Assembly: GCF_964213995.1 (NCBI RefSeq)
Contig: NC_135820.1
Span: 868,001 to 932,000 of the forward strand
Length of the DNA: 64,000 bases
From: Mustelus asterias
Lineage: Eukaryota
Reading direction: 5' to 3'
Shown here: in pieces, positions 7,601 to 61,170 of the stretch
How the letters are laid out: each line of letters begins with the position of its first letter
Position numbering within the stretch: position 1 is the stretch's first letter
Translations under genes and position numbers: made by a program
Notes under the pieces: generated by a model
The model's input: the letters and a program-made list of their open reading frames with translations, nothing else
The model's database searches: none
Told to the model about the DNA's origin: nothing

Positions 7601-8150
7601 GGCACTCCCTCAGCACTGACCCTCTGACAGTGCGGCACTCCCTCAGTACTGACCCTCTGAAAGTGCAGCACTCCCTCAGCACTGACCCTCTGACAGTGCG
7701 GCACTCCCTCAGTACTGACACTCTGACAGTGCGGCACTCCCTCAGTACTGACCCTCTGACAGTGCGGCACTCCCTCAGTACTGACCCTCTGACAGTGCGG
7801 CACTCCCTCAGTACTGACCCTCTGACACTGCAGCACTCCCTCAGCACTGACCCTCTGACAGTGCGGCACTCCCTCAGCACTGACCCTCTGACAGTACGGC
7901 ACTCCCTCAGCACTGACCCTCTGACAGTACGGCACTCCCTCAGTACTGACCCTCTGACGGTGCGACACTCCCTCAGTACTGACCCTCTGACATTGCGGCA
8001 CTCCCTCAGTACTGACCCTCTGACAGTGCGACACTCCCTCAGTACTGACCCTCTGACAGTGCGGCACTCCCTCAGTACTGACCCTCTGACAGTGCGACAC
8101 TCCCTCAGTACTGACCCTCTGACAGTGCGGCACTCCCTCAGCACTGACCG
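4665..8150 (-). repeat. 33-bp satellite (actgaccctctgacagtgcggcactccctcagt)n, about 100 copies, attached to Deu-domain SINE-like sequence at 4665-4760
   Basis: Periodicity. The reverse complement runs gagggagtgctgcagtgtcagaggtgctgtctttc...ccgagg..gtctgccctctcagg, resembling the Deu domain of AmnSINE1/SacSINE1 (from memory). Confidence 0.85.
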
Positions 8151-8416
8151 CTTGGTGAACTTTATCAGTGATGGAGTCACTCCCGCTCTCTGGGTCAAGG
8201 TTTTGCAAAGATTCCCAACCCTCGGAGTGAGGGCATTTCTCCTCATCTCAATCCAAAATGGCTGCCCCCCATCCCCTCGAAGGAAGCTTCTGGAATCCTT
8301 GGGAATATCTTCCTGGTGGAAGACTTCCCAGTTGGAATCAGTGAGGAGAAATATTCAGAAATTGCTGAGTAAATCGTTCCACTAATTATCTCGATATTTG
8401 TTTCAGCATTCGAGAA

Positions 8417-8462
8417 ATGGAACCCTTAATTTCCATCTTACTACTCCTGTCAAATAGCTGGT
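8417..8462 (+). CDS. Signal-peptide exon MEPLISILLLLSNSW
   Basis: ATG at 8417 in gaaATGg context, hydrophobic core, phase-1 donor T|gtaagt at 8463. Acceptor-like tttgtttcag ends at 8406. Joins exon 11570 to give ...SNSWYVVC-RAW. Confidence 0.75.
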
Positions 8463-11400: not shown

Positions 11401-14400
11401 GATTAGACTGGGTGGGATATTAAAGGGTGCGGGGAGTGAGGTGGAGAGTGGGGTTAGTGTGGGTGGGATATTAAATATCTCATTCCGTTGCTCGATGTTG
11501 ATTTAGAATGCACCTTGTGATGTTTGAAGTGACGAGAATGCTATATAATGCACTTTCTTCCTGTTCTAGATGTGGTTTGTCGGGCATGGAGTGTGACGGC
11601 CCCAGAGTCTGTAACTGGAGCTGAGGATTTGTGTCTGGTGATTCCTTGCACATTCCAGCATCCCCTCATGGACAAAGAGACCCTTGAGAAGGTCATGTGG
11701 TTACACGAGGACAAGGTCGATGGAGAACAAGTGATCTCTTCCGATGGTACCTCACACTCTCGCTTCCAGGGTCGCACAGAGTTCATTGGCAACTGGCGAC
11801 AAAAGAAAGATTGTAGCTTGAAAATAAAGAATTTACAGCAAGGGGATGAAGGAATATATCACTTCAGAATGAAATTCAGCAATGGAGTTAACTTCTCAGA
11901 CCCACAGGGAGTCTCGCTAAAACTAACCGGTAAGTTTAAACATCTTCCCAATCAGCTTTGCTCAATGTAACAGAAGACAAGTTCGAGGGGCTGAATGGCC
12001 TCCTCCTGTTCCTGTGTAACAGGCTCGAGGGGCTGAATGGGGCCTCCTCCTGTTCCTGTGTAACAGGCTCGAGGGGCTGAATGGGGCCTCCTCCTGTTCC
12101 TGTGTAACAGGCTCGAGGGGCTGAATGGGGCCTCCTCCTGTTCCTGTGTAACAGGCTCGAGGGGCTGAATGGGGCCTCCTCCTGTTCCTGTGTAACAGGC
12201 TCGAGGGGCTGAATGGGGCCTCCTCCTGTTCCTGTGTAACAGGCTCGAGGGGCTGAATGGGGCCTCCTCCTGTTCCTGTGTAACAGGCTCGAGGGGCTGA
12301 ATGGGGCCTCCTCCTAGTCCCGAAAGTGCTACACCCAGAACTGGGAGATAACTGTGCAAGATGTAAGAATAAGTGCGAGCTGGCCCAGAGGGCCACGGGA
12401 GGAGGTCTTCACATACAAATTAAAATTGGGCAAAAAGGGTTGAAGATGAAGGTGAAAGGTCACAGTGTAAAGTTGTGCCGTGTCGCACTGACTGCGTTTG
12501 CAAGGGAAGGTTCTGTGGGAAGAGTGTTGGGTGTGATGGACAACTGGACCAGGGTCTCCCTGAGGGAGCTGACAACAGCCAGTCCAAGGGGGGACGGTGT
12601 GGGGTAAGAGTGGCGGCATGACAGCGTCTGGAGGATCAGCCATGGTCTGGTTGAATGGCGGAACAGGCTCAAAGGGTGAAATGACCAACTCCTGCTCCTG
12701 TTTTCTATGTTTCCATGTGTACAGTTCCAGTCTCCATATCCCTCGGTTAGACCCACACCCGGAGCACTGTGCACAGTTCCAGTCTCCATATCCCTCGGTT
12801 AGACCCACACCCGGAGCACTGTGCACAGTTCCAGTCTCCATATCCCTCGGTTAGACCCACACCCGGAGCACTGTGCACAGTTCCAGTCTCCATATCCCTC
12901 GGTTAGACCCACACTGGGAGCACTGTGTACAGTTCCAGTCTCCATATCCCTCGGTTAGACCCACACTCGGAGCACTGTGCACAGTTCCAGTCTCCATATC
13001 CCTCGGTTAGACCCACACTCGGAGCACTGTGCACAGTTCCAGTCTCCATATCCCTCGGTTAGACCCACACTCGGAGCACTGTGCACAGTTCCATTCTCCA
13101 TATCCCTCGGTTAGACCCACACTCGGAGCACTGTGCACAGTTCCGGTCTCCATATCCCTTGGTTAGACCCACACTCGGAGCACTGTGCACAGTTCCAGTC
13201 TCCATATTCCTCGGTTAGACCCACACTCGGAGCACTGTGCACAGTTCCAGTCTCCATATTCCTCGGTTAGACCCACACTCGGAGCACTGTGCACAGTTCC
13301 AGTCTCCATATTCCTCGGTTAGACCCACACTGGGAGCACTGTGCACAGTTCCAGTCTCCATATCCCTCGGTTAGACCACACCCGGAGCACTGTGCACAGT
13401 TCCAGTCTCCCTATCCCTCGGTTAGACCACACTTGGAGCACTGTGCACAGTTCCAGTCTCCATATCCCTCGGTTAGACCACACCCGGAGCACTGTGCACA
13501 GTTCCAGTCTCCATATCCCTCGGTTAGACCCACACTCGGAGCACTGTGCACAGTTCCAGTCTCCATATCCCTCGGTTAGACCACACCCGGAGCACTGTGC
13601 ACAGTTCCCGTCTCCATATCCCTCGGTTAGACCCACACCCGGAGCACTGTGCACAGTTCCCGTCTCCATATCCCTCGGTTAGACCCACACTCGGAGCACT
13701 GTGCACAGTTCCAGTCTCCATATCCCTCGGTTAGACCCACACTCGGAGCACTGTGCACAGTTCCAGTCTCCATATCCCTCGGTTAGACCACACTCGGAGC
13801 ACTGTGCACAGTTCCAGTCTCCATATCCCTCGGTTAGACCCACACTGGGAGCACTGTGCACAGTTCCAGTCTCCATATCCCTCGGTTAGACCCACACTCG
13901 GAGCACTGTGCACAGTTCCAGTCTCCATATCCCTCGGTTAGACCACACTCGGAGCACTGTGCACAGTTCCAGTCTCCATATCCCTCGGTTAGACCACACT
14001 CGGAGCACTGTGCACAGTTCCGGTCTCCATATCCCTCGGTTACACCACACTCGGAGCACTGTGCACAGTTCCAGTCTCCATATCCCTCGGTTAGACCACA
14101 CTCGGGGCACTGTGCACAGTTCTGGTCTCCCTATCCCTCGGTTAGACCACACTCGGAGCACTGTGCACAGTTCCGGTCTCCATATCCCTCGGTTAGACCC
14201 ACACTCGGAGCACTGTGCACAATTCCAGTCTCCATATCCCTCGGTTAGACCCACACTCGGAGCACTGTGCACAGTTCCGGTCTCCATATCCCTCGGTTAC
14301 ACCACACTCGGAGCACTGTGCACAGTTCCAGTCTCCATATCCCTCGGTTAGACCCACACTCGGAGCACTGTGCACAGTTCCGGTCTCCATATCCCTCGGT

Positions 14401-17400
14401 TAGACCACACTCGGAGCACTGTGCACAGTTCCTGTCTCCATATCCCTCGGTTAGACCAGACTTGGAGCACTGTGCACAGTTCCAGTCTCCATATCCCTCG
14501 GTTAGACCCACACGCGGAGCACTGTGCGCAGTTCCAGTCTCCATATCCCTCGGTTAGACCCACACTCGGAGCACTGTGCACAGTTCCAGTCTCCATATCC
14601 CTCGGTTAGACCCACACTGGGAGCACTGTGCACAGTTCCGGTCTCCATATCCCTCGGTTAGACCACACTCGGAGCACTGTGCACAGTTCCAGTCTCCATA
14701 TCCCTCGGTTAGACGAGACTTGGAGCACTGTGCACAGTTCCGGTCTCCATATCCCTCGGTTAGACCACACTCGGAGCACTGTGCACTGTTCCTGTCTCCA
14801 TATCCCTCGGTTAGACCACACTCGGAGCACTGTGCACAGTTCCTGTCTCCATATCCCTCGGTTAGACCACACTCGGAGCACTGTGCACAGTTCCAGTCTC
14901 CATATCCCTCGGTTAGACCACACTCGGAGCACTGTGCACAGTTCCGGTCTCCATATCCCTCGGTTACACCACACTCGGAGCACTGTGCACAGTTCCAGTC
15001 TCCATATCCCTCGGTTAGACCACACTCGGGGCACTGTGCACAGTTCTGGTCTCCCTATCCCTCGGTTAGACCACACTCGGAGCACTGTGCACAGTTCCGG
15101 TCTCCATATCCCTCGGTTAGACCCACACTCGGAGCACTGTGCACAGTTCCAGTCTCCATATCCCTCGGTTAGACCCACACTCGGAGCACTGTGCACAGTT
15201 CCGGTCTCCATATCCCTCGGTTACACCACACTCGGAGCACTGTGCACAGTTCCAGTCTCCATATCCCTCGGTTAGACCCACACTCGGAGCACTGTGCACA
15301 GTTCCGGTCTCCATATCCCTCGGTTAGACCACACTCGGAGCACTGTGCACAGTTCCTGTCTCCATATCCCTCGGTTAGACCAGACTTGGAGCACTGTGCA
15401 CAGTTCCAGTCTCCATATCCCTCGGTTAGACCCACACGCGGAGCACTGTGCGCAGTTCCAGTCTCCATATCCCTCGGTTAGACCCACACTCGGAGCACTG
15501 TGCACAGTTCCAGTCTCCATATCCCTCGGTTAGACCCACACTGGGAGCACTGTGCACAGTTCCGGTCTCCATATCCCTCGGTTAGACCACACTCGGAGCA
15601 CTGTGCACAGTTCCAGTCTCCATATCCCTCGGTTAGACGAGACTTGGAGCACTGTGCACAGTTCCGGTCTCCATATCCCTCGGTTAGACCACACTCGGAG
15701 CACTGTGCACTGTTCCTGTCTCCATATCCCTCGGTTAGACCACACGCGGAGCACTGTGCACTGTTCCTGTCTCCATATCCCTCGGTTAGACCACACTCGG
15801 AGCACTGTGCACTGTTCCTGTCTCCATATCCCTCAGTTAGACCACACTCGGAGCACTGTGCACTGTTCCTGTCTCCATTTAGACCTAATATAATTTGGTA
15901 CCTTGTGCTCCTGTCACCCAGGAGGTATCCGGATGATTTATTTATTCTTTGAAAGCTGTCTGTTAATCAATTAACCCTGTGTCTATCTTCTCTCTTTCTC
16001 TAAAGATGTGTCTGGTTTGACAACCATTTTGCCACGGGGAGAGATGATGGAGAATACAGAGGTGAACATTCTTTGCTCAGTGAAGTATCTGTGCCCCGGT
16101 TTTCTCAGATGGGTCGGTATCAGCGGCTTAAACAGATCCTCATCAAGACAAATCGATGGTACTCTCCAAAACGGATGGGATACTGGCGTTGAACTGAGTT
16201 TCGTCACTTCATACAGGGATAATGCGAGGACACTGACATGTGAGATACAAACAGCATTTCGAGAAATTCACGCTGGAAACATCACCTTAAACGTGCAGTG
16301 TAAGTAATGAGCTCATGGAGAGGTTCTACTGTCTGGAGAAGGTCAGAGTTCACCTTGGCTCAATCACAGACTTCTAGAACAGGCGGAGCCCATTCAGCAC
16401 ATCGGGTCCATGCTATCCCTCTATAGAGCAATCCAGTCAATCCCATAGGCCCGCTCTATCCCTGCAAATCTATTTCTTGCCATTCTCCAAGAATCAGAGA
16501 ATCCCCTCAGTGCAGAAGGAGGCCATTCGGCCCATCGAGTCTGCACCGACTCTCCAAAAGAACACCCCATCCAGGCCCTCTCCTCATCTCCCCACAGATT
16601 CACCCCACAAATTTCCCTAAACTACACATCTTTGGAAACTAAGGGGCAATTTAGCACGGCCAATCCACCTAACCTGCACGTCTTTGGACACTAAGGGAAA
16701 ATTTACCATGGCCAATCCACCTAACCTGCACGTCTTTGGACACTAAGGGAAAATTTACCATGGCCAATCCACTTAACCGACACATGTTTTGACACTAAGG
16801 GGCAATTTAGCATGACCAATCCCCCGAATTTGCACATCTTTGGACACTAAGGGGCAATTTAGCACGGCCAATCTGTCTAACCTGCACATCTTTGGACACT
16901 AAGTGACAATTTACCATGGCCAATCCACCTAACCCACACCTTTGGACACTAAGGGGCAATTTAGCATGGCCAATCCCCCTAACCTACACATCTTTGGACA
17001 CTAAGGGGCAATTTAGCATAGCCAATCCACCTAACCTACACATCTTTGGACACTAAGGGGCAATTTAGCATGGCCAATCCACCTAAACCACACAGCTTTA
17101 TAGTGTGGGAGGAAAGCGGAGCACCCAGAGGAAACCCACGCAGAAACTGAGAGAATATGCAAGCCTCACAAGGACAGTCACCCAAGGCCAGAATGGAACC
17201 GGGTCCCTGGTGCCATGGTGCGGCAGTGCTAACCACTGTGCCACTGGAATGGAACCGGGTCCCTGGTGCCATGGTGCGGCAGTGCTAACCACTGTGCCAC
17301 TGGAACGCCTCAATCCAATTTCCACACGACTCGAGCCCTAGATGAAATTCCATGATCCACAATGATCTTCTGTGTAACAGGCTCAAGAGAGGCTGAATGG

Positions 17401-20400
17401 GGCCTCCTGCTGTTCCTGTGTAACAGGCTCGAGGGGCTGAATGGCCTCCTCCTGTTCCTGTGTAACAGGCTCGAGGGGCTGAGTGGAGCCTCCTCCTGTT
17501 CCTGTATAACAGGTTCGAGGGGCTGAATGGCCTCCTCCTGTTCCTGTGTAACAGGCTCGAGGGGCTGAATGGGGCCTCCTCCTGTTCCTGTGTAACAGGC
17601 TCGAGGGGCTGAATGGGGCCTCCTCCTGTTCCTGTGTAACAGGCTCGAGGGGCTGAATGGGGCCTCCTCCTGTTCCTGTGTAACAGGCTCGAGGGGCTGA
17701 ATGGGGCCTCCTCCTGTTCCTGTGTAACAGGCTCGAGGGGCTGAATGGGGCCTCCTCCTGTTCCTGTGTAACAGGCTCGAGGGGCTGAATGGGGCCTCCT
17801 CCTGTTCCTGTGTAACAGGCTCGAGGGGCTGAATGGCCTCCTCCTGTTCCTGTGTAACAGGCTCGAGGGGATGAATGGGGCCTCCTCCTGTTCATGTGTA
17901 ACAGGCTCGAGGGGGTGGAATGGGTCCTGTCCTTTACAGAGACGTATCCTGTGGTCATTTCTTGCCTTTGATGGGCTTTGGGACACCTGTATTGACTGTG
18001 ATTCCCGCTGGTATTAATGTGTCTCTTTAACTCTGTTCTCTTTCTGATCAGATGCTCCGAAGCTGGTTTACATTGATTCATCTGACTATACACAAAGCTA
18101 TGAAGGTGGCGGAGTGACTTTAACATGTATGATTTCAAACAGTAATCCTCCAGTAACACGTTACAGATGGAGGGGAGAGTCTGGTGTTCGCCTCTATGGA
18201 ATTACATATCAGAAAACATTCTCGACATCTGCAGTTCGTCAGTCTTTTCAATGTGAAGCAACTAACTCAGTGGGAACAACTGTGTCGGATTACGTCAGTC
18301 TGGTAAAGTTGAGTAGGTATCGAAATCTCCCATCACCCACCCTCAGGAAGTGTCAGCTCCGACAACCCTCCTTATCGCAGTAACCTCCTCCAGCCCCTAC
18401 ACTCCTCCCTATCGCAGTAACCTCCTCCAGCCCCTACACTCCTTCCTATCGCAGTAACCTCCTCCAGCCCCTACACTCCTCCCTATCGCAGTAACCTCCT
18501 CCAGCCCCTACACTCCTTCCTATCGCAGTAACCTCCTCCAGCCCCTACACTCCTCCCTATCGCAGTAACCTCCTCCAGCCCCTTCAACCCTCCCTATCGC
18601 AGTAACCTCCTCCATCCCCGACACCACCTTCCTATCTCTGTAACCTCCTCCAGCCTCTACACCTCTCCTTAGCTCTGTAACTACCTCCAACACCTACACC
18701 CCTCCCTATCTCTGCAACCTCCTCCAGCCCCTACACCCCTCCCTATCTCTGTAACCTCCTCCAGCCCCTACAGCCCTCCCTATCTCTGTAACTGCCTCCA
18801 ACACCTACAACCCTCCCTATCTCTGCAACCTCCTCCAGTCCCTACACCCCTCTCTAACTCTGTAACCTCCTCCAGCCCCTACACCCCCTCCCTATCTCTG
18901 TAACCTCCTCCAGCCCCTACACCCCTCCCTATCTCTGTAACCTCCACTGCCCATACAATCCCTCCAGAATGTGGGACTCGCTCCACACCCCCCCCCCCCC
19001 GCCACCCCCCCTCCCCCCCCCCACCCTCGACCCCGGGGAGTGGGGAGAATGTGGGACTCGCACCTCCCTCGGGGAGTGGAGAGAATGTGTGTCTGGCTCC
19101 CACTGGGAGTGGGGGAGAATGTGGGACTCGCTCCCACTGGGAGTGGGGGAGAATGTGGGACTGGCTCCCACTGGGAGTGGGGGAGAATGTGGGACTGGCT
19201 CCCACGGGGAGTGGTTGACGTGAATGGTATCGATGTGTTTAAGAGGGGAAGCTGGATAAACACATGAGGGTTTGATTTGATTTGATTTATTATTGTCACA
19301 TGTATTGGGATACAGTGAAAAGTTTTGTTTCTTGCGCGCTTTACAGACAGCATACTGTTCATAGAGAAGGAAAGAAGAGAGTGCAGAATGTAGTGTTACA
19401 GTCATAGCTAGGGTGTAGAGAAAGATCAACTTAATGCGAGGTAGGTCCACTCAAAAGTCTGACGGCAGCAGCAGGGAAGAAGCTGTTCTTGAGTCGGTTG
19501 GTACGTGATCTCAGACTTTTGTATCTTTTTCCCGACGGAAGAAGGTGGAAGAGAGAATGTCCGGGGTGCGTGGGGTCCTTAATTATGCCGGCTGCTTTTC
19601 CCGAGGCAGCGGGAAGTGTAGACAGAGTCAATGGATGGGAGAAAGGATTAGAAAGATATAGTGATGGCGGGGAGGTGAAGGAGATGTAGTGGTGGGGAGC
19701 GGCTTGTTTGGACCAGGAACATGGAGCAGAGGGGCTGAAAGGCCTGTTCCTGCATTGCAAATATAGAATATAGAACATAGAACAGTACAGCACAGAACAG
19801 GCCCTTCGGCCCACGATGTTGTGCCGAGCTTTGTCTGAAACCAAGATCAAGCTATCCCACTCCCTATCATCCTGGTGTGCTCCATGTGCCTATCCAATAA
19901 CCGCTTAAATGTTCCTAAAGTTTCTGGCTCCACTATCACTGCAGGCAGTCCATTCCACACCCCAACCACTCTCTGAATAAAAAACCTACCTCGGATATCC
20001 TTCCTATATCTCCCACCACGAACCCTATAGTTATGCCCCCTTGTAATAGCTCCATCCACCCGAGGAAATAGTCTTTGAACGTTCACTCTATCTATCCCCC
20101 CCATCATCTTATAAACCTCTATCAAGTCTCCTCTCAACCTCCTCCGCTCCAAAGAGAAAAGCCCAAGTTCCCTCAACCTTTCCTCATAAGACCTACCCTC
20201 CAAACCAGGCAGCATCCTGGTAAATCTCCTTTGCACTCTTTCCAGTGTCTCCACATCCTTCTTATAGTGAGGTGACCAGAACTGCACACAATATTCCAAA
20301 TGTGGTCTCACCAAGGTCCTGCACAGTTGCAGCATAACCCCACGGCTCTTAAACTCAAACCCCCTGTTAATGAACGCCAACACACTATAGACCTTCTTCA

Positions 20401-23400
20401 CGGCTCTATCCACTTGAGTGGCAACCTTCAGAGATCTATGGATATGAACCCCAAGATCTCTCTGTTCCTCCACATTCTTCAGAACCCTACCTTTGACCCT
20501 GTAATCCACACTTAAATTTGTCCTACCAAAATGAATCACCTCGCATTTGTCAGGGTTAAACTCCATTTGCCATTTTTCAGCCCAGCTCTGCATCCTATCT
20601 ATATCTCTTTGCAGCCTACAACAGCCCTCCACCTCATCCACTATTCCACCAATCTTGGTGTCATCAGCAAATTTACTGATCCACCCTTCAGCCCCCTCCT
20701 CCAAGTCATTTATAAAAATGACAAATAGCAGAGGACCAAGCACTGATCCCTGTGGCACTCCACTGGTAACTGGTTTCCAGTCCGAAAATTTTCCATCCAC
20801 CACCACCCTCTGTCTTCTGTTAGATAGCCAGTTACCTATCCAATCGGCCAAACTTCCCTCTATCCCACACATCCTTACTTTCTTCATAAGCCAACCGTGG
20901 GGGACTTTATCAAACGCCTCACTAAAATCCATGTATATGACATCAACTGCACTACCTTCATCTACACACTTAATTACCTCCTCAAAAAATTCTATCAAAT
21001 TTGTGAGGCAAGACTTGCCCTTCACAAATCCGTGCTGACTATCCCGGATTAAGCTGCATCTTTCTAAATGGTCGTAAATCCTATCCCTGAGGACCTTTTC
21101 CATCAACTTACCGACCACCGAAGTAAGACTAACCGGCCTATAATTACCAGGGTCATTTCTATTCCCTTTCTTAAACAGAGGAACAACATTCGCCATTCTC
21201 CAGTCCTCTGGCACCACCCCCGTGGACAGTGAGGACGCAAAGATCAATGCCAAGGGCTCTGCTATCTCATCCCTTGCCTCCCAAAGACTCCTAGGATATA
21301 TTTCATCAGGCCCAGGGGACTTATCAACTTTCAGTTTATTCAAAATTGCCAATACATCTTCCCTCCGAACATCTACTTCCTCCAGCCTATCAGCCTGTGA
21401 CATCCTCTCTTCCTCAAAAACATGGCCCCTCTCCTTGGTGAACACCGAAGAAAAGTATTCATTCATCGCCTCTCCTATCTCTTCTGACTCCATGCACAAA
21501 TTCCCACTGCCGTCCTTGACCGGCCCCAACCTCACCCTGGTCATTCTTTTATTCCTCACATAAGAGTAAAAAGCCTTGGGGTTTTCCTTGATCCGACCCG
21601 CCAAGGACTTCTCATGTCCCCTCCTAGCTCTCCAAACCCCTTTTTCAGCTCATTTCTTGCTAACTTGTAACCCTCCATCGGGCCAACTGAACCTTGTTTT
21701 CTCAACCTTACATATGCTTCCTTTTTCCTCTTGACAAGACATTCCACCTCTTCTGTGAACCATGGTTCCCTCACTCGGCCATTTCCTCTCTGCCTGACAG
21801 GGACATACCTATCAAGGACACGCAGTATTTGTTCCTTGAAAAAGTTCCACTTTTCATTAGTGCCTTTCCCTGACAATTTTTGTTCCCATCCTATGCTTCC
21901 TAATTCCTGCCTGATTGCATCATAATTACCTCTCCCCCAATTGTAAACCTTGCCCTGCCGTACGGCCCTCTCCCTCTCCATTGCAATAACAAAAGACACC
22001 GAATTGTGGTCACTATCTCCAAAGTGCTCTCCCACAACCAAATCCAACACTTGGCCCGGTTCATTTCCCAGTACCAAATCCAATGTGGCCTCACCTCTTG
22101 TCGGCCTATCCACATATTGTGTCAGGAAACCCTCCTGCACACACTGCACAAAAACTGCCCCATCCAAACTATTCGACCTATAAAGGCTCCAATCAATATT
22201 TGGAAAGTTAAAGTCCCCCATGACAACTACCCTGTGACCTCCACACATATCCATAATCTGCTTAGCAATTTCTTGCTCCACATCTCTGTTACTATTTGGG
22301 GGCCTATAGTAAACTCCTAACAACGTGGCCGCTCCTTTCCCATTCCTAACCTCAGCCCATATTACCTCAGTGTGCAGATCCCCCTCGAAGTGCCTTTCCG
22401 CAGCCGTTAAACTATCCTTGATTAACAATGCCACTCCTCCACCTCTTTTACCAGCTTCCCTACACTTACTGAAACATCTATACCCCGGAACTTCCAACAA
22501 CCATTCCTGTCCTTGTTCTACCCATGTCTCCGTAATGGCCACAACATCGTAGTCCCAAGTGCCAATCCACGCCCCAAGTTCACCTACCTTATTTCGGATG
22601 CTCCTTGCATTGAAGTAGACACACTTCAACCCACCTTCTTGTCTGCTGGTACCCACCTTTGACCGTGATACCCTTCCCAGTACCTCACTACACTCACTGA
22701 CCTCCGTACTACAGCTCCTTTTCCCATCCCCCTGACAAATTAGTTTAAACCCCCCCAAAGAGCCGTAGCAAATTTCCCTCCCAGGATATTGGTCCCCCTC
22801 TGGTTCAGGTGCACCCCGTCCTGTTGGTACAGGTCCCACCTTCCCCAGAATGTGTTCCAATTATCCACATAGCTGAAACCCTCCCTCCTACACCATCCCT
22901 GCATCCATGTGTTTAACTGCACTCTCTCCCTGTTCCTCAACTCGCTATCCCGTGGCACCGGCAACATACCAGAGATGACAACCTGTTTTGTCCTGGCTCT
23001 CAGCTTCCACCCTAGCTCCCTGAATTCCTGTTTTAAATCCCCGTCCCCTCTCTTACCGATGTCTTTGGTGCCGACGTGTACCACGACTTGTGACTGTTCC
23101 CCCTCCCCCTTTAGAATCCTGAAGACACGGTCGGAGATGTCACGGACCCTGGCATCCAGGAGGCAACATACCATCCGTGAGTCTCTCTTGTTGCCACAGA
23201 ACCTCCTATCTATCCCTCTAACAAATGAGTCCCCAATAACTATAGCCCTCCCGCTCTCCCCCTTTCCCTTCTGAGCCACAGGGACGGACTCAGCGCTGGC
23301 GATCTGGACACTGCGGCTTACCACTGGTAGGTCGCGCCCCTCACCTGTATCCAAAGTGGAATACTTGTTGCTAAGGGGAACGACCACAGGGGATCCCCGC

Positions 23401-44400: not shown

Positions 44401-47400
44401 ACTGAGGGAGTGCCGCACTGTCAGAGGGTCAGTGCTGAGGGAGTGCAGCACTGTCAGAGGGTCAGTACTGAGGGAGTGCCGCACTGTCAGAGAGTCAGTA
44501 CTGAGGGAGTGCCGCACTGTCAGAGGGTCAGTACTGAGGGAGTGCCGCACTGTCAGAGGGTCAGTACTGAGGGAGTGCCGCACTGTCAGAGGGTCAGTAC
44601 TGAGGGAGTGCCGCACTGTCAGAGGGTCAGTACTGAGGGAGTGCCACACTGTTGAATGCATTGCCGCTGCAGATTGTTGAGACATCAAACAGTTTTCTAT
44701 TTTCTGTGAAGGGTGCAATTGATCATAGGGTCTCTCTACCGCCCCCCCGCCGCCCGCCCCCCCCCCCCCCCCCGGCGTCCGGGGACCAATATCTGTCCCT
44801 CAGCGAACATCACCATCGTGTCTCACTGAAGATTTCTTTTCACAGACCCTCCCACCGATGTGAGAATCGATTCTCCAGCTTCTGTTCGAGATGGAGGGTA
44901 CGTGACATTAACTTGTCAATTCGATGCCAATCCGACAACATATTCCATCGCCTGGATCAAGGAATGTGACAGTGTTTCATCAGATCTGTGTAGATATTCC
45001 TCATCTTGTGGATTCACTGCCTCACTGGATCGTGTTCACTGTGTCTATTATTGTACAGCAAGGAATAGTCTTGGAGAACAGAAGTCTGGTCCCAAACAAT
45101 TAAATATCGTGTGTAAGTATCCAGAATGTGATTCACTCTGACCCAGAATATTCACTAATCCCCTTCATACGCTTTCAATTTCAAATTCACACAGTCCAGT
45201 TCCCTTTCTTTGTAACCTCCTCCAGCCCCTACACCCCCTCCCTATCTCTGTAACCTCGTCCAGCCCCTACACCCCCTCCCTATCTCTGTAACCTCCTCCA
45301 GCCCCTACAACCCTCCCTATCTCTGTAACCTCCTCCAGTCCCTACACCCCTCCCTATCTCTGTAACCTCCCCCAGCCCCGACACTCCTCCCTATCTCTGT
45401 AACCTCCTCCAGCCCATACACCCCCTCCCTATCTCTGTAACCTCCCCCAGCCCCGACACTCCTCCCTATCTCTGTAACCTCCTCCAGCGTCTACAACCCT
45501 CCGTGATCTCTGCGTTCCACCAATTCCAGTCCCTCAAGCATCCCCCGATTCCCATCGCTCCGCCATTGGCGGCCGTGCCTTCAGCTGCCTGGGGGGCCCT
45601 GAGCTCTGGAAATCCCTCCCTGAACTTGTCTGTCTCTCTCTCCCTCTGCCTCTCTCTCTGTCTTTATTTCTTACTCCCTCACCTCCTCCAGCCCCTACAC
45701 CCCTCCCTATCACCATAGCCTCCTAAAGCCCCGACACCCCCTCCCTTTCTCTGTAACCTCTTCCAGCCCCCTAGACCCTCCCTATCTCTGTAACCTCCTA
45801 CAGCCCCTACAGCGCCCCCTTATCTTTGTAACCTCCTCCAGTCCCTACAATCCTCGCTATCTCTGTAACCTCCTCCAGCCCGTACACCCCTCCCTATCCC
45901 TGTAACCTCCTCCAGCCCCTACACCCCCTCCCTATCTCTGTAACCTCCTCCAGCCTGTACACCCCTCCCTATCTCTGTAACCTCCTTCAGCCCCCTCCAA
46001 TCCTCCGAGATCTCTGCGCTCCTCCAATTCCAGCCTCTTGAGCATCCCCCGATTCCCATCGCTCCGCCATTGGCGGCCGTGCCTTCAGCTGCCTGGGGGA
46101 TCCTAAACTCTGGAATTCCCTCCCTGAAGCTCTCCACCTCTGTCTTGATCTCTTGATCAGGGTCTAACCTGTCTGATGATCTTCCTCTGTCAGTCAATTG
46201 GAAGCATTCCTCATTGATGGCGCTACACAAAGGCAGATCTATTATTCTGTTTCTACCATTTTACTGTTTCAATTTCAGATTCATCCGTTTAAATATTAAT
46301 CTCCAGTTTTTTCTTGACGAGAATATTTGAGACATGCAGAATTATTTAAAAAGTTTCATTCTCCACAGACAAGCCGAGAAGTGTGAGGATTATTTCCGAC
46401 ACAACAGTGAAGGATGGAACACAGATTACTTTAACTTGTCAAAGTGAGGCAAACCCTCCGGCAAATACTTTTCAGTGGAGGAAGCGATGCAATAGGAATG
46501 TTCAAGTTCTCCGGGGAACTTCCCAGTCAATCAGGATTACAATGACAAGCGATGATGAGCTTTGTGACTATTTCTGTCGAGCCCAGAACAATATTGGTGT
46601 CCAGGACTCTGAAACCAAACGCATTATTGTACAATGTAAGTCGTGAGTGTGAGAGATACCTCCTCCCCGATCTTTACAGTGAGCATGGAGCAGAGTTCCA
46701 ACCTCCATCTCCCTTGGTTAGACCCACACTGGGAGCACTGTGCACAGTTCCAGTCTCCATTTCCCTCGGTTAGACCCACACTCGGAGCACTGTGCACAGT
46801 TCCAGTCTCCATATCCCTCGGTTAGACCACACTCGGGGCACTGTGCACAGTTCCAGTCTCCATATCCCTCGGTTAGACCACACTCGGGGCACTGTGCACA
46901 GTTCCAGTCTCCATATCCCTCGGTTAGACCCACACTCGGAGCACTGTGCACAGTTCCGGTCTCCCTATCCCTCGGTTAGACCCACACTCGGAGCACTGTG
47001 CACAGTTCCAGTCTCCATATCCCTCGGTTAGACCACACTCGGAGCACTGTGCACAGTTCCAGTCTCCGTATCCCTCGGTTGGACCACACTCGGAGCACTG
47101 TGCACAGTTCCAGTCTCCATATCCCTCGGTTAGACCCACACTGGGAGCACTGTGCACAGTTCCAGTCTCCGTATCCCTCGGTTGGACCACACTGGGAGCA
47201 CTGTGCACAGTTCCAGTCTCCATATCCCTCGGTTAGACCACACTCGGAGCACTGTGCACAGTTCCAGTCTCCATATCCCTCGGTTAGACCCACACTGGGA
47301 GCACTGTGCACAGTTCCAGTCTCCGTATCCCTCGGTTGGACCACACTCGGAGCACTGTGCACAGTTCCAGTATCTGTATCCCTCGGTTGGACCACACTCG

Positions 47401-59400: not shown

Positions 59401-59909
59401 TTCAGTCTGGGCTCTCTGTGTACTTGAATTTTTAACTCTCCAAGCACAGGAAAAGCACCACCTTTTAACGGGACCACGCAATGCTTTCCCCCTTCGTCTT
59501 TGACCACATTTACAAACACCAAATTCTAATTTCCTCCCTCCCAATCTACAGTTACTTTTCCCAACTCCGCAACACTGGTCCTGTGACAACACCACTGCGA
59601 TATTCGTGAGACTGTCTTCTACCTCAACCCCGCCTCCTCTTAACGCCCCAAAGTTAAAGCCAAGAGCTCCCCCCCAGTCTGAAGCGTGGGCGATGGTGGG
59701 ACATTCCCAGCACTCTGGGAGGGGGAGTATCGTACATTGAGTTCCTGCCCTGTGTTTCCCCAGGCCAAAGAGACGACGGTGTATGAGAACATGGTGATGG
59801 CGGACAGCATGGAGAATCAGGTAGCGCCTCCCTTTGCTGAGAATGTGGAATACGCCTCCATTAACTTCACATATAAACCCTCAGGAGAAGGGCAAAAGGA
59901 GGCAATTCG
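8417..59909 (+). CDS. Siglec-family / CD22-like Ig-superfamily receptor, 15 coding exons in window (leader, V-C2-C2-V-C2x7, TM, 2 cytoplasmic exons); 3' end probably outside window
   Basis: Exons 8417-8462, 11570-11929, 16006-16299, 18052-18312, 24967-25317, 33699-33998, 38858-39139, 41704-41988, 44846-45112, 46369-46635, 49160-49429, 51969-52244, 53767-53854, 57390-57474, 59764-59909. All internal boundaries are AG/GT with compatible phases (1-1 for Ig exons); 3578 nt with no internal stop. Confidence 0.85.
8490..11478 (+). repeat. 51-bp G-rich minisatellite, about 58 copies
   Basis: (gggattagactgggtgggatattaaagggtgcggggagtgagggggagagt)n fills the leader-V1 intron. Confidence 0.95.
11570..11929 (+). 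CDS. Ig domain 1, Siglec-type V-set
   Basis: AWSV...CLVIPCTF...RFQGRTEFIG...DCSLKI...DEGIYHFR. Siglec B/E-strand Cys pattern; essential Arg codon at 11866-11868; ttctag| and G|gtaagt boundaries. Confidence 0.92.
11980..12315 (+). repeat. 44-bp tandem repeat derived from the CR1 3' UTR
   Basis: (aacaggctcgaggggctgaatggggcctcctcctgttcctgtgt)n; compare the CR1 tail at 61121-61160. Confidence 0.85.
12715..15885 (+). repeat. 51/52-bp satellite derived from the CR1 RPHLEYCxQFWSP region, about 61 copies
   Basis: Unit translates VRPHSEHCAQFQSPYPS; DNA matches the CR1 at 1568-1615. Confidence 0.92.
16006..16299 (+). CDS. Ig domain 2, Siglec D2-type C2-set
   Basis: CSVKYLCP extra Cys typical of Siglec domain 2, FLRW, DNARTLTC, ITLNVQ; phase 1-1. 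Confidence 0.9.
16490..17305 (-). mobile_element. HE1/V-SINE-type SINE with a duplicated tRNA head and about 9 copies of a 52-bp internal repeat
   Basis: Reverse-complement heads gtggcacagtggttagcactgc (2 copies, 17190-17305), V-domain-like core, tttggacactaaggggcaatttagc repeats at 16630-17090, CR1-like tail at 16490-16550. Confidence 0.8.
17370..17925 (+). repeat. 44-bp CR1-3'UTR-derived tandem repeat, second array
   Basis: Same unit as 11980-12315. Confidence 0.85.
18052..18312 (+). CDS. Ig domain 3, short C2-set
   Basis: YAPK...VTLTC..SNPPVTRYRW...FQCEATNSVG. Acceptor atcag ends at 18051; donor A|gtaggt at 18313. Confidence 0.85.
18360..18950 (+). repeat. 37-bp L2-derived minisatellite (cccctccctatctctgtaacctcctccagcccctaca)n
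   Basis: Unit encodes PPYLCNLLQP; a tatcgcagtaacc variant occurs in the 5' half. Confidence 0.85.
18965..19270 (+). repeat. 33/34-bp CR1-derived repeat (GVGRMWDSLPR) plus downstream CR1 flank
   Basis: Followed by ggagtggttgacgtgaatggtatcgatgtgtttaag (GVVDVNGIDVFK). Confidence 0.75.
19272..19640 (-). mobile_element. Rex1/Babar-like LINE 3' fragment
   Basis: KAAGIIKDPTHPGHSLFHLLPSGKRYKSLRSRTNRLKNSFFP; (TCAAA)n-type tail. Confidence 0.75.
19760..23890 (-). mobile_element. Near full-length CR1 LINE: ORF1 (Zn-finger-like + SGNH esterase) and frameshifted ORF2 (APE + RT)
   Basis: ORF 22740..23744 with CxxC..CxxC, GDS, HVGTKD and DGVH; ORF 21556..22860 with APE motifs (NARSI, TETW, GDFN, SDH); ORF 19847..21604 RT (KFADD); TTCTATG-type tail at about 19760-19785. 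Confidence 0.95.
24345..24800 (-). mobile_element. Rex1/Babar-like LINE 3' fragment, internally deleted
   Basis: TLTNFYRCIIVSILSGCITAW...DRKKVQRV; same gatttgatttattattgtcacatg end as at 19272. Confidence 0.75.
24967..25317 (+). CDS. Ig domain 4, second Siglec-type V-set
   Basis: NWGVWSP...SCVVIPCRF...RVQFLG...NCTLKI...DSGQYYFRIEMGSYKWS. Arg codon at 25257-25259; ttacag| and G|gtgagt boundaries. Confidence 0.92.
25385..26290. repeat. CT-rich low-complexity tract with N runs at 25574-25731 and 25799-26131
   Basis: Seen directly. Confidence 0.9.
26353..33655 (-). repeat. 33-bp Deu-SINE-related satellite, about 220 copies, with higher-order blocks
   Basis: Same unit and orientation as 4750-8150; ends about 45 bp before the D5 acceptor. 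Confidence 0.95.
33699..33998 (+). CDS. Ig domain 5, Siglec D2-type C2-set
   Basis: PEKP...VTCSVQIRCP..PTLQW...FTPRFQDRDQTVRC...LNLQ; phase 1-1. Confidence 0.92.
34330..38630 (+). repeat. L2 LINE 3' fragment with an internal 37-bp expansion (34375-34930, 37515-38500), interrupted by a CR1
   Basis: IFVFK upstream; RSLRSSNSGLLSIP..RAFSCLG..LWNSL downstream at 38500-38620. Confidence 0.8.
34930..37512 (-). mobile_element. Degenerate CR1 ORF2 (APE+RT) lacking ORF1 and the 3' end
   Basis: Fragment ORFs 37145..37528, 36766..37101, 36371..36763, 35328..36269, 35121..35315, 34906..35127. Confidence 0.9.
38858..39139 (+). CDS. Ig domain 6, C2-set
   Basis: YKPRN...EGDFVTLRC...SNPAVNQYTW...DYGKYYCKAGN; phase 1-1. 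Confidence 0.92.
39185..39395 (-). mobile_element. CR1 3' end fragment
   Basis: aacatagaaacatagaagataggagcagg...ggccattcggccc tail. Confidence 0.7.
39540..39990 (+). mobile_element. Old CR1 ORF2 3' fragment
   Basis: TQRVVVIWKALPERALEADSIGTFK; short internal duplication. Confidence 0.6.
40165..40650 (+). repeat. 33/34-bp GVGRMWDSLP expansion inside a CR1 fragment
   Basis: Preceded by gtcactaataaatccaatggggaaatcaggagaaacttccttacccagagagt (VTNKSNGEIRRNFLTQRV). Confidence 0.85.
40950..41575. repeat. 17-bp purine-rich minisatellite (ggagaggggagggagat)n
   Basis: Direct periodicity. Confidence 0.95.
41704..41988 (+). CDS. Ig domain 7, C2-set
   Basis: YAPRD...LNITC..SNPPVTRYSWLKNG...DRGQYYCQARNDVG; phase 1-1. 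Confidence 0.92.
42095..42360. repeat. CT/CTGT microsatellite
   Basis: Seen directly. Confidence 0.9.
42395..44652 (+). repeat. 33-bp Deu-SINE-related satellite, about 68 copies, opposite orientation to the 4.7-kb and 26-kb arrays
   Basis: (actgagggagtgccgcactgtcagagggtcagt)n; Deu-like continuation ccggcgtccggggaccaatat at about 44772-44815. Confidence 0.95.
44846..45112 (+). CDS. Ig domain 8, Cys-rich C2-set
   Basis: YPPTDV...VTLTCQFDANP...W...HCVYYCTARNSLG; phase 1-1. Confidence 0.9.
45200..46135 (+). repeat. Two L2 3' fragments, each with a 37-bp expansion
   Basis: Each array ends in gatctctgcg..ccaattcc..ggccgtgccttcagctgcctgggg (45500-45620, 46005-46125). Confidence 0.8.
46369..46635 (+). 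CDS. Ig domain 9, C2-set
   Basis: YKPRSV...ITLTCQSEANPP..FQW...LCDYFCRAQNNIG; phase 1-1. Confidence 0.9.
46700..48125 (+). repeat. CR1-derived composite: 51/52-bp array (46700-47600), unique CR1 spacer, 33-bp array (47738-48125)
   Basis: The spacer translates DLIKGFKILKGF..GETRTRG..VTNKSNGEFR, colinear with CR1 ORF2. Confidence 0.88.
48168..49080. repeat. (ggggagtgac)n-based G-rich minisatellite
   Basis: Direct periodicity with 10-12-bp variants. Confidence 0.9.
49160..49429 (+). CDS. Ig domain 10, C2-set
   Basis: YGPKEV...EGDHVWLECASRSNP..YTWYK...NAGKYYCRVENIMG; phase 1-1. Confidence 0.92.
49715..51294 (+). repeat. 37-bp L2-derived array ending in an L2 fragment; N run 51295-51805 follows
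   Basis: Periodicity; RSLRSSNSGL motif at about 51170. Confidence 0.88.
51969..52244 (+). CDS. Ig domain 11, membrane-proximal C2-set
   Basis: YTPRNT...GDNITLTCRSDSNPPVDRYKW...DKGVYSCEARNQLG; donor A|gtaagt. Confidence 0.92.
52297..52467. mobile_element. Short palindromic Penelope-like terminal remnant with a candidate 10-bp TSD
   Basis: Inverted arms at 52337-52379 and 52426-52469; actcttaccc at 52287-52296 and 52468-52477. Confidence 0.55.
52553..53705. mobile_element. Fragments of the LINE family seen at 2.1-3.0 kb, in both orientations (+52553-53092, -53095-53303, -53372-53705)
   Basis: Near-identical to 2428-2960; the minus ORFs show DIKAAFDRV and GVPQGSVQGPTIFSCFINDLP. Confidence 0.8.
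53767..53854 (+). CDS. Transmembrane exon KNNIKLIVIIIVLLLVILFMVISAVLFYRR
   Basis: About 23 apolar residues followed by a basic stop-transfer; phase 1 in, AG|gtaagc phase 2 out. Not in the ORF track. Confidence 0.88.
53925..56005 (+). repeat. CR1-derived composite: 51/52-bp array (53925-55372), 33-bp array (55375-55925), CR1 end
   Basis: Ends ggagtggttgaggtgaacagtatc...gttggataaacacatgagggagaaaggaatagaagga (GVVEVNSI...LDKHMREKGIEG). Confidence 0.88.
56262..57030 (+). mobile_element. HE1/V-SINE-type SINE with 8 tandem 66-bp tRNA-derived heads
   Basis: Each unit has an A-box-like tgRcacagtggt and a B-box ggttcgattcc; V-domain gtgtggagtctgcacgttctccccgtg follows at about 56810. Confidence 0.88.
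57055..57262 (-). mobile_element. 3' fragment of the 2.1-3.0 kb LINE family
   Basis: Reverse complement of about 2720-2930. Confidence 0.75.
57390..57474 (+). CDS. Cytoplasmic exon 1 (RKRNGDSISQQRFEATNTVYSVVMKRNR), ITSM-like
   Basis: tgcag| acceptor in phase 2 matches the TM exon; donor AGG|gtaagt in phase 0; TxYxxV at 57442-57459. Confidence 0.8.
57500..58262 (-). mobile_element. Degenerate CR1 3' fragments
   Basis: ORF 57867..58325: LVRPHLEYCVQFW...YSSEFRRVRGD. Confidence 0.8.
58984..59312 (+). mobile_element. Single-head, full-length HE1/V-SINE-type SINE
   Basis: A/B boxes, V domain, and CR1-like tail gcagactcgatgggccgaatggcct...gattctat. Confidence 0.88.
59764..59909 (+). CDS. Cytoplasmic exon 2 with YENM and ITIM VEYASI
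   Basis: tttccccag| acceptor in phase 0; AKETTVYENM...NVEYASINF...EAIR; likely donor CG|gtatgt at 59910. Confidence 0.82.
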
Positions 59910-59959: not shown

Positions 59960-61170
59960 GTCTGAGTGGGCGAGGGTCGGGCAGATGGAGAACAATGTTG
60001 GTAAACCTGAGGTCATCCATTTTGGTCGGAATAACAGCAAAATGGACTATTATTTAAATGGTAAAAAATTGCAGCTTGCTGCTGTGCAGAGGGACCTGGG
60101 TGTCCTTGTGCAGGAATCTCAAAAATGTTGGTTTGCGGGGAGGCGATGGCCCAGTGGTATTATTGCTAGCCTATTAATCCAGAAACTCGGCTAATGTTCT
60201 GGGGACCTGGGTTCGAATCCCACCACGGCAGGTGGTGAAATTTGAATTCAATAAAAAATATCTGGAATTAATAATCCAATGATGATCATAAAACTGTTGT
60301 CGATTGTCATAAAAACCCATCTGGTTCACTAATGTCCTTTAGGGAAGGAAATCTGCCATCCTTACCTGGTCTGGCCTACATGTGACTCCAGAGCCACAGC
60401 AACGTGGTTGATTCTTAACTGCCCTCCAAGGGCAACTAGGGATGGGCAATAAATCCTGGCCCAGCCAGCGACACCCGTGTCCCAGGAATGAATAAAAATA
60501 AAGTTGCAGCAGGTAATTAAGAAGGCAAATGGAATTTTGTCCTTCATTGCGAGAGGGATGGAGTTTAAAAACAGCGAGGTTATGTTGCAGCTGTATAAGG
60601 TGCTGGTGAGGCCACACCTGGAGTACTGTGTACAGTTTTGGTCTCCTTACTTGAGAAAGGATATACTGGCACTGGAGGAGGTGCAGAGGAGGTTCACTGG
60701 GTTGATTCTGGAGTTCAGAGGGTTGGCTTATGAGGAGAGACTGAGTAGACTGGGGCTATACTCATTGGAATTCAGAAGAATGAAGGGCGATCTTATAGAA
60801 ACATATCAGATTATGAAGGGAATAGATAAGACAGAAGCAGGGAAGTTGTTTCCACTGGCGGGTGAAACTAGAACTAGGGGGCATAGCCTCAAAATAAAGG
60901 GGGAGCCGATTTAGGACTGAGTTGAGGAGGAACTTCTTCACACAAAGATTTGTGTGGAACTCCCTACCCAGTGAAGCAGTTGAGGCTACCTCATTGAATG
61001 TTTTTAAGGCAAGGATAGATAAATTTTTGAACAGTAAAGGAATTAAGGGTTATGGTGAGCGGGCGGGTAAGTGGAGCTGAGTCTACAAAAAGATCAGCCA
61101 CGATCTTATTGAATGGCGGAGCAGGCTCGAGGGGCCGGATGGCCGACTCCTGCTCCTAGTTCTTATAGAT
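59960..61170 (+). mobile_element. CR1 3' fragment interrupted by a SINE
   Basis: ORF 60504..60914 with RPHLEYCVQFWSP; 3' UTR to about 61165. Confidence 0.85.
60137..60502 (+). mobile_element. tRNA-derived SINE of a second family, inserted into the CR1
   Basis: A-box tggcccagtgg, B-box ggttcgaatcc, A-rich end gaatgaataaaaa. Confidence 0.8.

What the first reader, a model, noticed from the sequence alone, without database searches (positions are those of the whole stretch)
8417..59909. Siglec/CD22-like receptor with two complete sialic-acid-binding modules, one internal (V-C2-C2-V-C2x7)
Seen: two V-set exons (11570, 24967), each with an N-terminal Trp, CxxIPC, an E-strand Cys and the F-strand Arg (YHFR; YYFR), and each followed by a domain-2-type exon with the extra Cys (CSVxxxCP). 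All junctions are phase 1. There is no TM exon, stop or convincing leader between D3 and V2, and V2 lacks the signal-peptide remnant that V1 has. Known: Siglecs normally have one N-terminal V-set; Siglec-12 has two but adjacent, and CD22 has 7 domains. Inference: a bivalent 11-domain lectin with sites at two heights above the membrane, e.g. cis versus trans ligands or two linkage specificities. I cannot check whether this architecture is already reported in fish CD22-like genes.
Basis: partly seen in the sequence, partly recalled or inferred. Interest (0 to 1): 0.85.

Follow-up and report, generated by a model that had tools for sequence, protein, structure and literature searches.

The report
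Shark CD22-like receptor with two lectin heads
This is a shark gene for a CD22-like sialic-acid receptor that carries a second, internal sugar-binding domain; the exons are real, but the same gene model is already in public annotation for this shark and sixteen other sharks and rays.

Summary
Eleven open Ig exons lie on the + strand, all phase 1-1 with AG/GT borders, in the order V-C2-C2-V-C2x7. A TM exon and two cytoplasmic exons follow. The three N gaps are intronic.

All eleven exons match RefSeq XP_078092341.1 ("B-cell receptor CD22-like", Mustelus asterias, 1288 aa) at 100%. That model uses the 18312->24967 junction. All 51 elasmobranch models examined, from 17 species, join D3 directly to V2, and none starts at V2.

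Both V-sets look like working Siglec heads:
- Each hits Pfam Ig_CD22.
- Each aligns its Arg with the sialic-acid Arg of sialoadhesin or MAG.
- Each folds as a Siglec V-set (Z 18-22).
- The Arg is kept in 51/51 V2 and 46/48 V1.

V2 groups with rodent CD22, with moderate support. V1-D2-D3 looks like an old N-terminal add-on that predates the shark/ray split.

Eight paper searches found no description of this architecture.

Verdict: a real single gene (about 0.75) whose bivalent function is untested. It is annotated but apparently undescribed. Interest is moderate.

The parts
8407..8462 (+). Leader exon. The in-window ATG is at 8417 and the donor is phase 1. The RefSeq CDS enters at acceptor 8406|8407 from an upstream exon outside the window.
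11570..11929 (+). V1, the N-terminal Siglec V-set (W, CxxIPC, E-strand C, YHFR).
   Evidence: Pfam V-set 1.2e-10 and Ig_CD22 2.9e-10. Sialoadhesin 1.5e-14 with its W and FR aligned. AF2 pLDDT 93; MAG Ig1 Z 18.8 and sialoadhesin Z 18.1. 100% match to P0165 from residue 26.
16006..16299 (+). D2, a domain-2-type C2 exon with the extra Cys (CSVxxxCP).
   Evidence: 100% match to P0165 from residue 146. No Pfam hit.
18052..18312 (+). D3, a C2 exon. Its phase-1 donor A|gtaggt sits at the same position as the other C2 donors.
   Evidence: Pfam Ig_2 8.6e-08. 100% match to P0165 from residue 244.
18313..24966 (+). D3-V2 intron (6.65 kb). It has no TM-like stretch and no good leader. It holds a LINE on the minus strand.
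   Evidence: scan. (ORFs 19847-21604, 21556-22860 and 22740-23744 on the minus strand).
24967..25317 (+). V2, the internal Siglec V-set (W, CxxIPC, E-strand C, YYFR, G-strand W).
   Evidence: Pfam Ig_CD22 1.6e-15. MAG 1.5e-13 and CD22 8e-11. 100% match to P0165 from residue 331. Arg kept in 51/51 models.
25574..26131 (.). Two assembly gaps (25574-25731 and 25799-26131) inside the V2-D2b intron.
   Evidence: V2 and D2b are adjacent in the orthologues.
33699..33998 (+). D2b, a domain-2-type C2 exon with the extra Cys.
   Evidence: 100% match to P0165 from residue 448.
38858..39139 (+). C2 exon (domain 6).
41704..41988 (+). C2 exon (domain 7).
44846..45112 (+). C2 exon (domain 8).
46369..46635 (+). 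C2 exon (domain 9).
49160..49429 (+). C2 exon (domain 10).
51295..51805 (.). Assembly gap inside the intron between domains 10 and 11.
   Evidence: The two domains are adjacent in the orthologues.
51969..52244 (+). C2 exon (domain 11).
53767..53854 (+). Transmembrane exon (phase 1 in, phase 2 out).
   Evidence: Matches P0165.
57390..57474 (+). Cytoplasmic exon with a TxYxxV motif.
59764..59909 (+). Cytoplasmic exon with a YENM motif and a VxYxxI (ITIM-type) motif. The remaining tail exons lie beyond the window.

Best explanation
The stretch is most of one gene. It is the Mustelus asterias 'B-cell receptor CD22-like' Siglec (RefSeq XP_078092341.1, 1288 aa).

The product is a type-I membrane protein built as follows: signal peptide; V1-C2-C2; V2-C2x7; TM; and a tail with several ITIM/ITSM-type tyrosines and a YxN site.

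V2 and what follows it is the CD22-type body. Its first three domains (V2-D2b-next C2) form a complete Siglec head, and eight domains from V2 to the membrane compare with seven in mammalian CD22. V1-D2-D3 is an old N-terminal extension that carries a second Siglec V-set. It was joined through phase-1 exon borders before sharks and rays split.

Shown here:
- The exons, phases and junction-compatible splice sites.
- Identity to the RefSeq model.
- Conservation of the order in 17 species.
- The Siglec fold and Arg of both V-sets.

Inferred:
- Both heads bind sialic acid.
- The outer head reaches trans ligands while the inner, CD22-height head sees cis ligands.
- Ligand engagement tunes inhibitory signalling through phosphatase recruitment to the ITIMs, as established for mammalian CD22.
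For: - All 11 Ig exons are open, phase 1-1, with AG/GT borders.
- They match P0165 at 100% in the order V1@26, D2@146, D3@244, V2@331, D2b@448 and so on. The junction residues are those predicted for leader->V1 and 18312->24967.
- P0165 is XP_078092341.1.
- 51 of 51 elasmobranch models from 17 species have D3 followed directly by V2, and 0 of 51 start at V2.
- There is no TM-like stretch and no good leader in 18313-24966.
- Pfam Ig_CD22 hits both V-sets.
- The PDB alignments put V1's W and FR on sialoadhesin's, and V2's W and YYFR on MAG's.
- V2 keeps Arg in 51/51 models and the G-strand Trp in 51/51. V1 keeps Arg in 46/48.
- In a paralogue's model the V2-D2b-C2 unit superposes on MAG Ig1-3 (Z 21.6, 300 aa) and CD22 d1-d3 (Z 20.1, 294 aa).
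- The window's V1 model superposes on MAG Ig1 (Z 18.8) and sialoadhesin (Z 18.1).
- In the tree, V1s and V2s never mix. Each group splits into sharks versus batoids. V2s are sister to gerbil/degu CD22 V-sets at 85/84.
- The tail motifs are visible in P0165.
Against:
- All 51 models appear to come from automated annotation (names and accession types). Such pipelines can copy an architecture between species, so the models are not independent.
- V2 begins like a mature Siglec N-terminus, as expected if it once had its own leader.
- The D3 donor (gtaggt) is weaker than the others, and D3 lacks the usual exon ending.
- Tree support for the V2 clade (84/57) and for the V1 group (77/98) is modest.
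- Binding by either head is untested. D3 is attached only a few residues before V2's A-strand Trp, which in sialoadhesin contacts the sugar (recalled), so the inner site could be hindered.
Confidence: 0.75

Rival explanations
1. There are two tandem Siglec genes: an upstream short V-C2-C2 gene (secreted or decaying) and a normal CD22-like gene. Gene predictors merged them because every border is phase 1.
For: - V2 starts like a mature N-terminal V-set.
- V1 and V2 are only 35% identical, and D2/D2b only 29%.
- A 6.65-kb intron holding a LINE separates them.
- Reading through the D3 donor reaches a stop after about 23 codons.
- Multi-V Siglec-like models that could be fusions are common in other vertebrates.
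- No RNA check was possible.
Against: - There is no leader-like exon with a usable donor and no TM exon between D3 and V2.
- The D3 donor GT is kept at the family position and in phase.
- 0 of 51 models in 17 species start at V2.
- Pristis has three paralogues that all keep the five-domain V-C2-C2-V-C2 head on different bodies.
- V1 keeps its Arg and cysteines across sharks and rays.
Confidence: 0.1
2. It is one gene, but the heads are used as cassettes. Because all Ig exons are phase 1-1, exon skipping gives single-headed isoforms (leader->V2, or forms without V1) as major products.
For: - All exons are symmetric phase 1.
- Scyliorhinus canicula isoform X2 goes from the leader to D2 without V1.
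- The Rhinoraja model lacks D2, and a Pristiophorus fragment lacks D2b.
Against: - 48 of 51 models carry V1.
- No model skips V1-D2-D3 as a block to put V2 first.
- These isoforms are predictions whose support I could not see.
Confidence: 0.1
3. It is one gene and one protein, but only the outer V1 is a lectin. The internal V2 keeps its Arg by descent and serves as a structural or protein-binding domain, because D3 sits on its N-terminal strand.
For: - D3 ends four residues before V2's A-strand Trp.
- Heterodontus has K in place of that Trp (2 of 51 models).
Against: - Arg is kept in 51/51, the G-strand Trp in 51/51 and all three Cys in 51/51 over the shark/ray split.
- V2 is, if anything, better conserved than V1.
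Confidence: 0.15

Closest known systems
Mammalian CD22 (Siglec-2)
   Same: - Pfam Ig_CD22 hits.
- V2 groups with rodent CD22 V-sets.
- V2-D2b-C2 superposes on CD22 d1-d3 (Z 20.1, rmsd 4.9 over 294 aa).
- Long C2 stalk, TM, and a tail with several ITIM-type tyrosines and a YxN site.
   Different: - 11 Ig domains rather than 7.
- The CD22-type V-set is domain 4, preceded by V-C2-C2.
- V2 to the membrane is 8 domains.
- Ligand specificity and B-cell expression are untested.
Siglec-12 (two V-set domains)
   Same: A Siglec with two V-sets in one chain. This was seen only as a passage in PMC6288428.
   Different: From recall, its two V-sets are adjacent. Here they are separated by two C2 domains, and each has its own domain-2-type partner with the extra Cys.
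Sialoadhesin (Siglec-1)
   Same: - V1's best sequence match in the PDB, with W and FR aligned.
- The idea of a long stalk lifting a head away from cis ligands. This comes only from the title and abstract of PMC10027830 in a search listing.
   Different: - It has one V-set and 16 C2 domains, and no ITIM tail (recalled).
- V1 does not group with the Siglec-1 V-sets in the tree.
Myelin-associated glycoprotein (Siglec-4)
   Same: - Best fold match for both heads: Z 21.6 for V2-D2b-C2 and Z 18.8 for V1.
- V2's first residues align with MAG's mature N-terminus.
   Different: - It has five domains and one V-set.
- Sequence identity is 23-28%.
Multi-V-set Siglec-like gene models of other non-mammalian vertebrates (gar and sturgeon 'MAG-like', softshell turtle 'CD22-like', caecilian, teleost and ray 'Siglec-12/8')
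   Same: Repeated V or V-C2 units in one predicted chain.
   Different: - They have other unit orders (V-C2-V-C2, V-V-V-C2, (V-C2-C2)x3) and are not collinear with this gene.
- Whether they are real transcripts is unknown.

Membership tests
Siglec (I-type sialic-acid lectins) | A V-set domain with the conserved F-strand Arg that binds the sialic-acid carboxylate. | tested here: met
   V1's FR aligns with sialoadhesin's and V2's YYFR with MAG's. Arg is kept in 46/48 V1 and 51/51 V2. That this Arg is the ligand-binding residue is recalled knowledge.
Siglec (I-type sialic-acid lectins) | The Siglec-type V-set fold. | tested here: met
   V1 model: pLDDT 93, MAG Z 18.8 and sialoadhesin Z 18.1, against about Z 14 for generic V domains. 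V2 of a paralogue: sialoadhesin Z 19.9, rmsd 1.2-1.7.
Siglec (I-type sialic-acid lectins) | Three Cys in the V-set plus an extra Cys in domain 2 (intrasheet and interdomain disulfides). | tested here: inconclusive
   The Cys pattern is present in V1/D2 and V2/D2b and kept in the orthologues. The actual bonding is not testable here.
Siglec (I-type sialic-acid lectins) | Sialic-acid binding. | not testable with these tools
   This needs recombinant protein and glycan arrays.
CD22 (Siglec-2) | CD22-type first Ig domain. | tested here: met
   PF24518 scores 57.9 bits for V2 and 41 bits for V1 (cut-off 27). V2s are sister to gerbil/degu CD22 V-sets at 85/84.
CD22 (Siglec-2) | Seven Ig domains with the V-set at the N-terminus. 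| tested here: not met
   There are eleven Ig exons, and the CD22-type V-set is the fourth.
CD22 (Siglec-2) | Cytoplasmic tail with several ITIMs and a Grb2-type YxN site. | tested here: met
   The motifs were read in P0165. Two of the tail exons are in the window. The motif definitions are recalled.
CD22 (Siglec-2) | B-cell expression and alpha2,6 specificity. | not testable with these tools
Siglec-12-type tandem V-set | Two adjacent N-terminal V-sets. | tested here: not met
   V1 and V2 are separated by D2 and D3.

The most novel reading that the evidence does not exclude
Elasmobranch CD22 is a natural two-site lectin. The ancestral CD22 head is kept at about its usual height above the membrane for cis ligands. 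An elasmobranch-wide three-domain extension carries a second, differently specific Siglec head for trans ligands. One inhibitory receptor would then integrate 'self on my own surface' and 'self on the other cell'. The add-on was captured by phase-1 exon shuffling from a neighbouring Siglec before sharks and rays diverged.
Probability: 0.3. Interest if true: 0.6.

Novelty: new variant of a known kind. Interest (0 to 1): 0.4.

Why it matters
From recall, textbook Siglecs have a single N-terminal lectin domain, and how CD22 balances cis against trans ligands is a central question for B-cell inhibition. A CD22-type receptor that keeps two intact heads at two heights across sharks and rays would be a natural experiment on that question. 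It would also be an example of domain gain by phase-1 exon shuffling in an immune receptor.

The value is tempered in three ways:
- The gene model already sits in RefSeq for this locus and for 16 other species.
- Multi-V Siglec-like models are common in non-mammalian annotations.
- Nothing about binding or transcripts could be tested here.

Tried and rejected

2. Transcript fragments. A search with V2 alone (candidate proteins about 64-203 aa by the tool's length window) found nothing. A search with the D3-V2 part of P0010 found only P0010 and P0019. These blanks say little, because the word index and the length window are narrow.

4. Recent tandem duplication. Rejected: V1/V2 are 35% identical and D2/D2b 29%, and V1 and V2 form separate old groups.

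5. An exon hidden in an N gap. Rejected by domain adjacency in the orthologues.

6. V1 as a Siglec-1 derivative. It is the best PDB sequence hit but is not supported by the tree, so this is left open.

7. Papers. Eight searches were made.
   - Passages were read in PMC6288428 (Siglec-12 only), PMC10768021 (irrelevant, the matches were to CD223) and PMC7226832 (teleosts only, with no shark and no second V-set).
   - Nothing was found on an internal V-set in cartilaginous-fish Siglecs.
   - Subscription papers are outside the library and may treat this. One I recall is a 2018 review of Siglec evolution, which I did not see.
   - No supplementary file was requested.

8. Tree rows left out: all primate and human proteins, isoforms, the fragments P0010 and P0019, and Mobula hypostoma. 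One Rhincodon third V-like segment is a long branch inside the V1 group.

Exons were searched one by one. The full chain was examined only as the database protein P0165.

Full report
What is in the sequence. On the + strand I read a leader exon with its ATG at 8417, ending at 8462 before gtaagt in phase 1. Eleven Ig exons follow:
- V1 11570-11929
- D2 16006-16299
- D3 18052-18312
- V2 24967-25317
- D2b 33699-33998
- C2 exons 38858-39139, 41704-41988, 44846-45112, 46369-46635, 49160-49429 and 51969-52244

Each Ig exon is a multiple of three in length, is open in the expected frame, begins after AG and ends before GT, and is phase 1 at both ends. A hydrophobic TM exon lies at 53767-53854. Two cytoplasmic exons lie at 57390-57474 and 59764-59909.

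It does sit at the same position as the donors of the other C2 exons and is the only phase-1 GT there.

The gaps. The N runs are 25574-25731, 25799-26131 and 51295-51805. The first two lie in the intron after V2, and the third in the intron between the tenth and eleventh Ig exons. None touches an exon, and none lies between D3 and V2. In the great white, basking shark and catshark orthologues, the domains on either side of each gap are directly adjacent. No exon is therefore expected inside a gap.

Between D3 and V2. A scan of 18313-24966 in three frames found no stretch with 13 or more of 18 strongly hydrophobic residues. The only ATG-started hydrophobic peptides ending at a phase-1 GT had poor donors. 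The same scan recovered the true leader at 8417 upstream of V1. About 4 kb of this 6.65-kb intron is a LINE on the minus strand, with long ORFs at 19847-21604, 21556-22860 and 22740-23744.

Identity of the gene. An HMMER search of 1.84 billion representatives with V2 returned proteins whose best match lies near residue 320 and which have two matched stretches. These are RefSeq-style 'B-cell receptor CD22-like' models of sharks and rays.

A profile search with eight of them returned P0165, 'B-cell receptor CD22-like [Mustelus asterias]', 1288 aa, XP_078092341.1. All eleven window exons match it at 100%, in order, at residues 26, 146, 244, 331, 448, 548, 642, 737, 826, 915 and 1005. Its sequence shows the residues expected at the leader->V1 and 18312->24967 junctions.

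That model begins nine residues earlier, in a coding exon that is not in the window. It ends in tail exons beyond 64000.

How widespread. I placed the window's V1, D2, D3, V2, D2b and next C2 on 51 elasmobranch models. These came from Carcharodon, Cetorhinus, Chiloscyllium, Hemiscyllium, Rhincodon, Heterodontus, Mustelus, two Scyliorhinus, Pristiophorus, Pristis, Rhinoraja, Amblyraja, two Mobula, Hemitrygon and Hypanus.
- In 51 of 51, D3 is followed directly by V2, and none starts at V2.
- Three models lack V1: two fragments and S. canicula isoform X2, which runs from the leader to D2.
- Rhinoraja lacks D2, and one Pristiophorus fragment lacks D2b.
- Pristis has three paralogues that share the five-domain head on different bodies.

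These models appear to come from automated annotation, so they are not independent proofs of a transcript.

Beyond elasmobranchs, predicted Siglec-like proteins with several V-sets in other arrangements are common. They occur in gar, sturgeon, softshell turtle, a caecilian, teleosts and rays.

Are both heads Siglec heads?
- Pfam: Ig_CD22 (PF24518) and V-set hit both V1 and V2.
- PDB sequences, V1: the best match is sialoadhesin (1.5e-14), with its N-terminal W and its FR aligned.
- PDB sequences, V2: the best match is MAG (1.5e-13), then sialoadhesin and CD22 (8e-11). V2's first residues align with MAG's mature N-terminus, and YYFR aligns with MAG's.
- V2 across the 51 models: Arg 51/51, the G-strand Trp 51/51, all three Cys 51/51, and the A-strand Trp 49/51.
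- V1 across the 48 models that have it: Arg 46/48 (Gln in two), with the aligned G-strand position always Y or F.
- Fold of V1: an AF2 model of the window's V1 (pLDDT 93.1) matches MAG Ig1 (Z 18.8, rmsd 1.5-1.6 over 114-115 residues) and sialoadhesin (Z 18.1). Siglec and PILR V-sets fill the top 34 rows.
- Fold of V2: an AF2 model of a 666-aa Chiloscyllium paralogue that holds the six N-terminal domains has pLDDT 81.6. Its V2-D2b-C2 unit lies on MAG Ig1-3 (Z 21.6, 300 residues) and CD22 d1-d3 (Z 20.1, rmsd 4.9 over 294 residues). V2 alone lies on sialoadhesin at rmsd 1.2-1.7. In that run the V1 half was barely tested, which is why I folded V1 separately.

History. V1 and V2 are 35% identical, and D2 and D2b 29%, so this is not a recent duplication. 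I built a tree of 51 V-set segments from 29 proteins, leaving out primates, isoforms and fragments.
- The 15 N-terminal V-sets fall together, along with one long-branch Rhincodon segment. Support is weak at 77/98.
- The 16 internal V-sets form one clade (84/57) that is sister to gerbil and degu CD22 V-sets (85/84).
- Within each group, batoids separate from sharks.

Taken with the CD22-like tail, the simplest reading is that V2 onward is the CD22 body. V1-D2-D3 would then be an extension gained before sharks and rays split. The source of V1 is unresolved: sialoadhesin is the best sequence hit, but the tree does not place V1 with Siglec-1.

What I could not do.
- No RNA evidence was obtained. 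No run on record as RNA holds V2.
- Two protein searches for short transcript-derived fragments crossing D3->V2 found none, which means little.

Mechanism.
- Shown: a type-I membrane Siglec with two structurally intact V-set heads, each paired with a domain-2-type C2 bearing the extra Cys, an eight-domain CD22-type body, and an ITIM-rich tail.
- Inferred from established CD22 and sialoadhesin biology (recalled, plus the listing of PMC10027830): the tail recruits phosphatases to damp antigen-receptor signalling. The inner head, at about CD22's usual height, would meet cis ligands. The outer head, three domains further out, would be freer to meet trans ligands.
- A caution: D3 is attached four residues before V2's A-strand Trp, so the inner site may be partly hindered.

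Novelty and score. Eight paper searches and passages from three papers gave nothing on cartilaginous-fish Siglecs with an internal V-set. The only two-V-set Siglec met in print was Siglec-12. Subscription literature was not searchable.

The architecture is therefore public as annotation but apparently undescribed. I file it as a new variant of a known kind, with moderate interest (0.4). I put one gene making a two-headed protein at about 0.75, and two genes merged by prediction at about 0.1.

Noticed in passing
window 19847-23744 (minus strand): A LINE with three long, nearly contiguous ORFs of 334, 434 and 585 aa (the last with a reverse-transcriptase-like sequence). It fills about 4 kb of the D3-V2 intron. 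Without it that intron would be about 2.7 kb.
   Followed up: no
window 5023-8385, 26156-33723 and 42247-44718: Very large arrays of one short repeat that reads as a 13-residue unit in long open frames. The third array is inverted relative to the first two, so inverted arms flank exons D2b to the seventh Ig exon.
   Followed up: no
window 8500-11450, 12700-15900, 46700-47600 and 54100-55900: Several other tandem-repeat families fill most introns of the gene. Open reading frames in them are mechanical artefacts of the repeats.
   Followed up: no
This gene may therefore sit in a Siglec cluster, a possible source of the V1-D2-D3 add-on.
   Followed up: no
P0008 (Pristis 'MAG-like', 836 aa) and one other model: V1 has Gln instead of the F-strand Arg while V2 keeps it (2 of 48 models). 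The outer head has lost the canonical residue in some paralogues.
   Followed up: partly
P0169 (Scyliorhinus canicula isoform X2), P0013 (Rhinoraja) and P0010 (Pristiophorus fragment): These are predicted forms that skip V1, D2 or D2b respectively, which phase 1-1 exons allow. Alternative head composition may exist.
   Followed up: partly
P0171 (Rhincodon 'sialoadhesin-like', 947 aa), residues about 639-755: A third V-like segment that sits on a very long branch with odd composition in the tree. It may be a degenerate domain or a model error.
   Followed up: no
window 35328-37528 (minus), 53340-53707 (minus), 57867-58325 (minus) and 60504-60914 (plus): Further broken LINE reverse-transcriptase fragments in the introns.
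   Followed up: no
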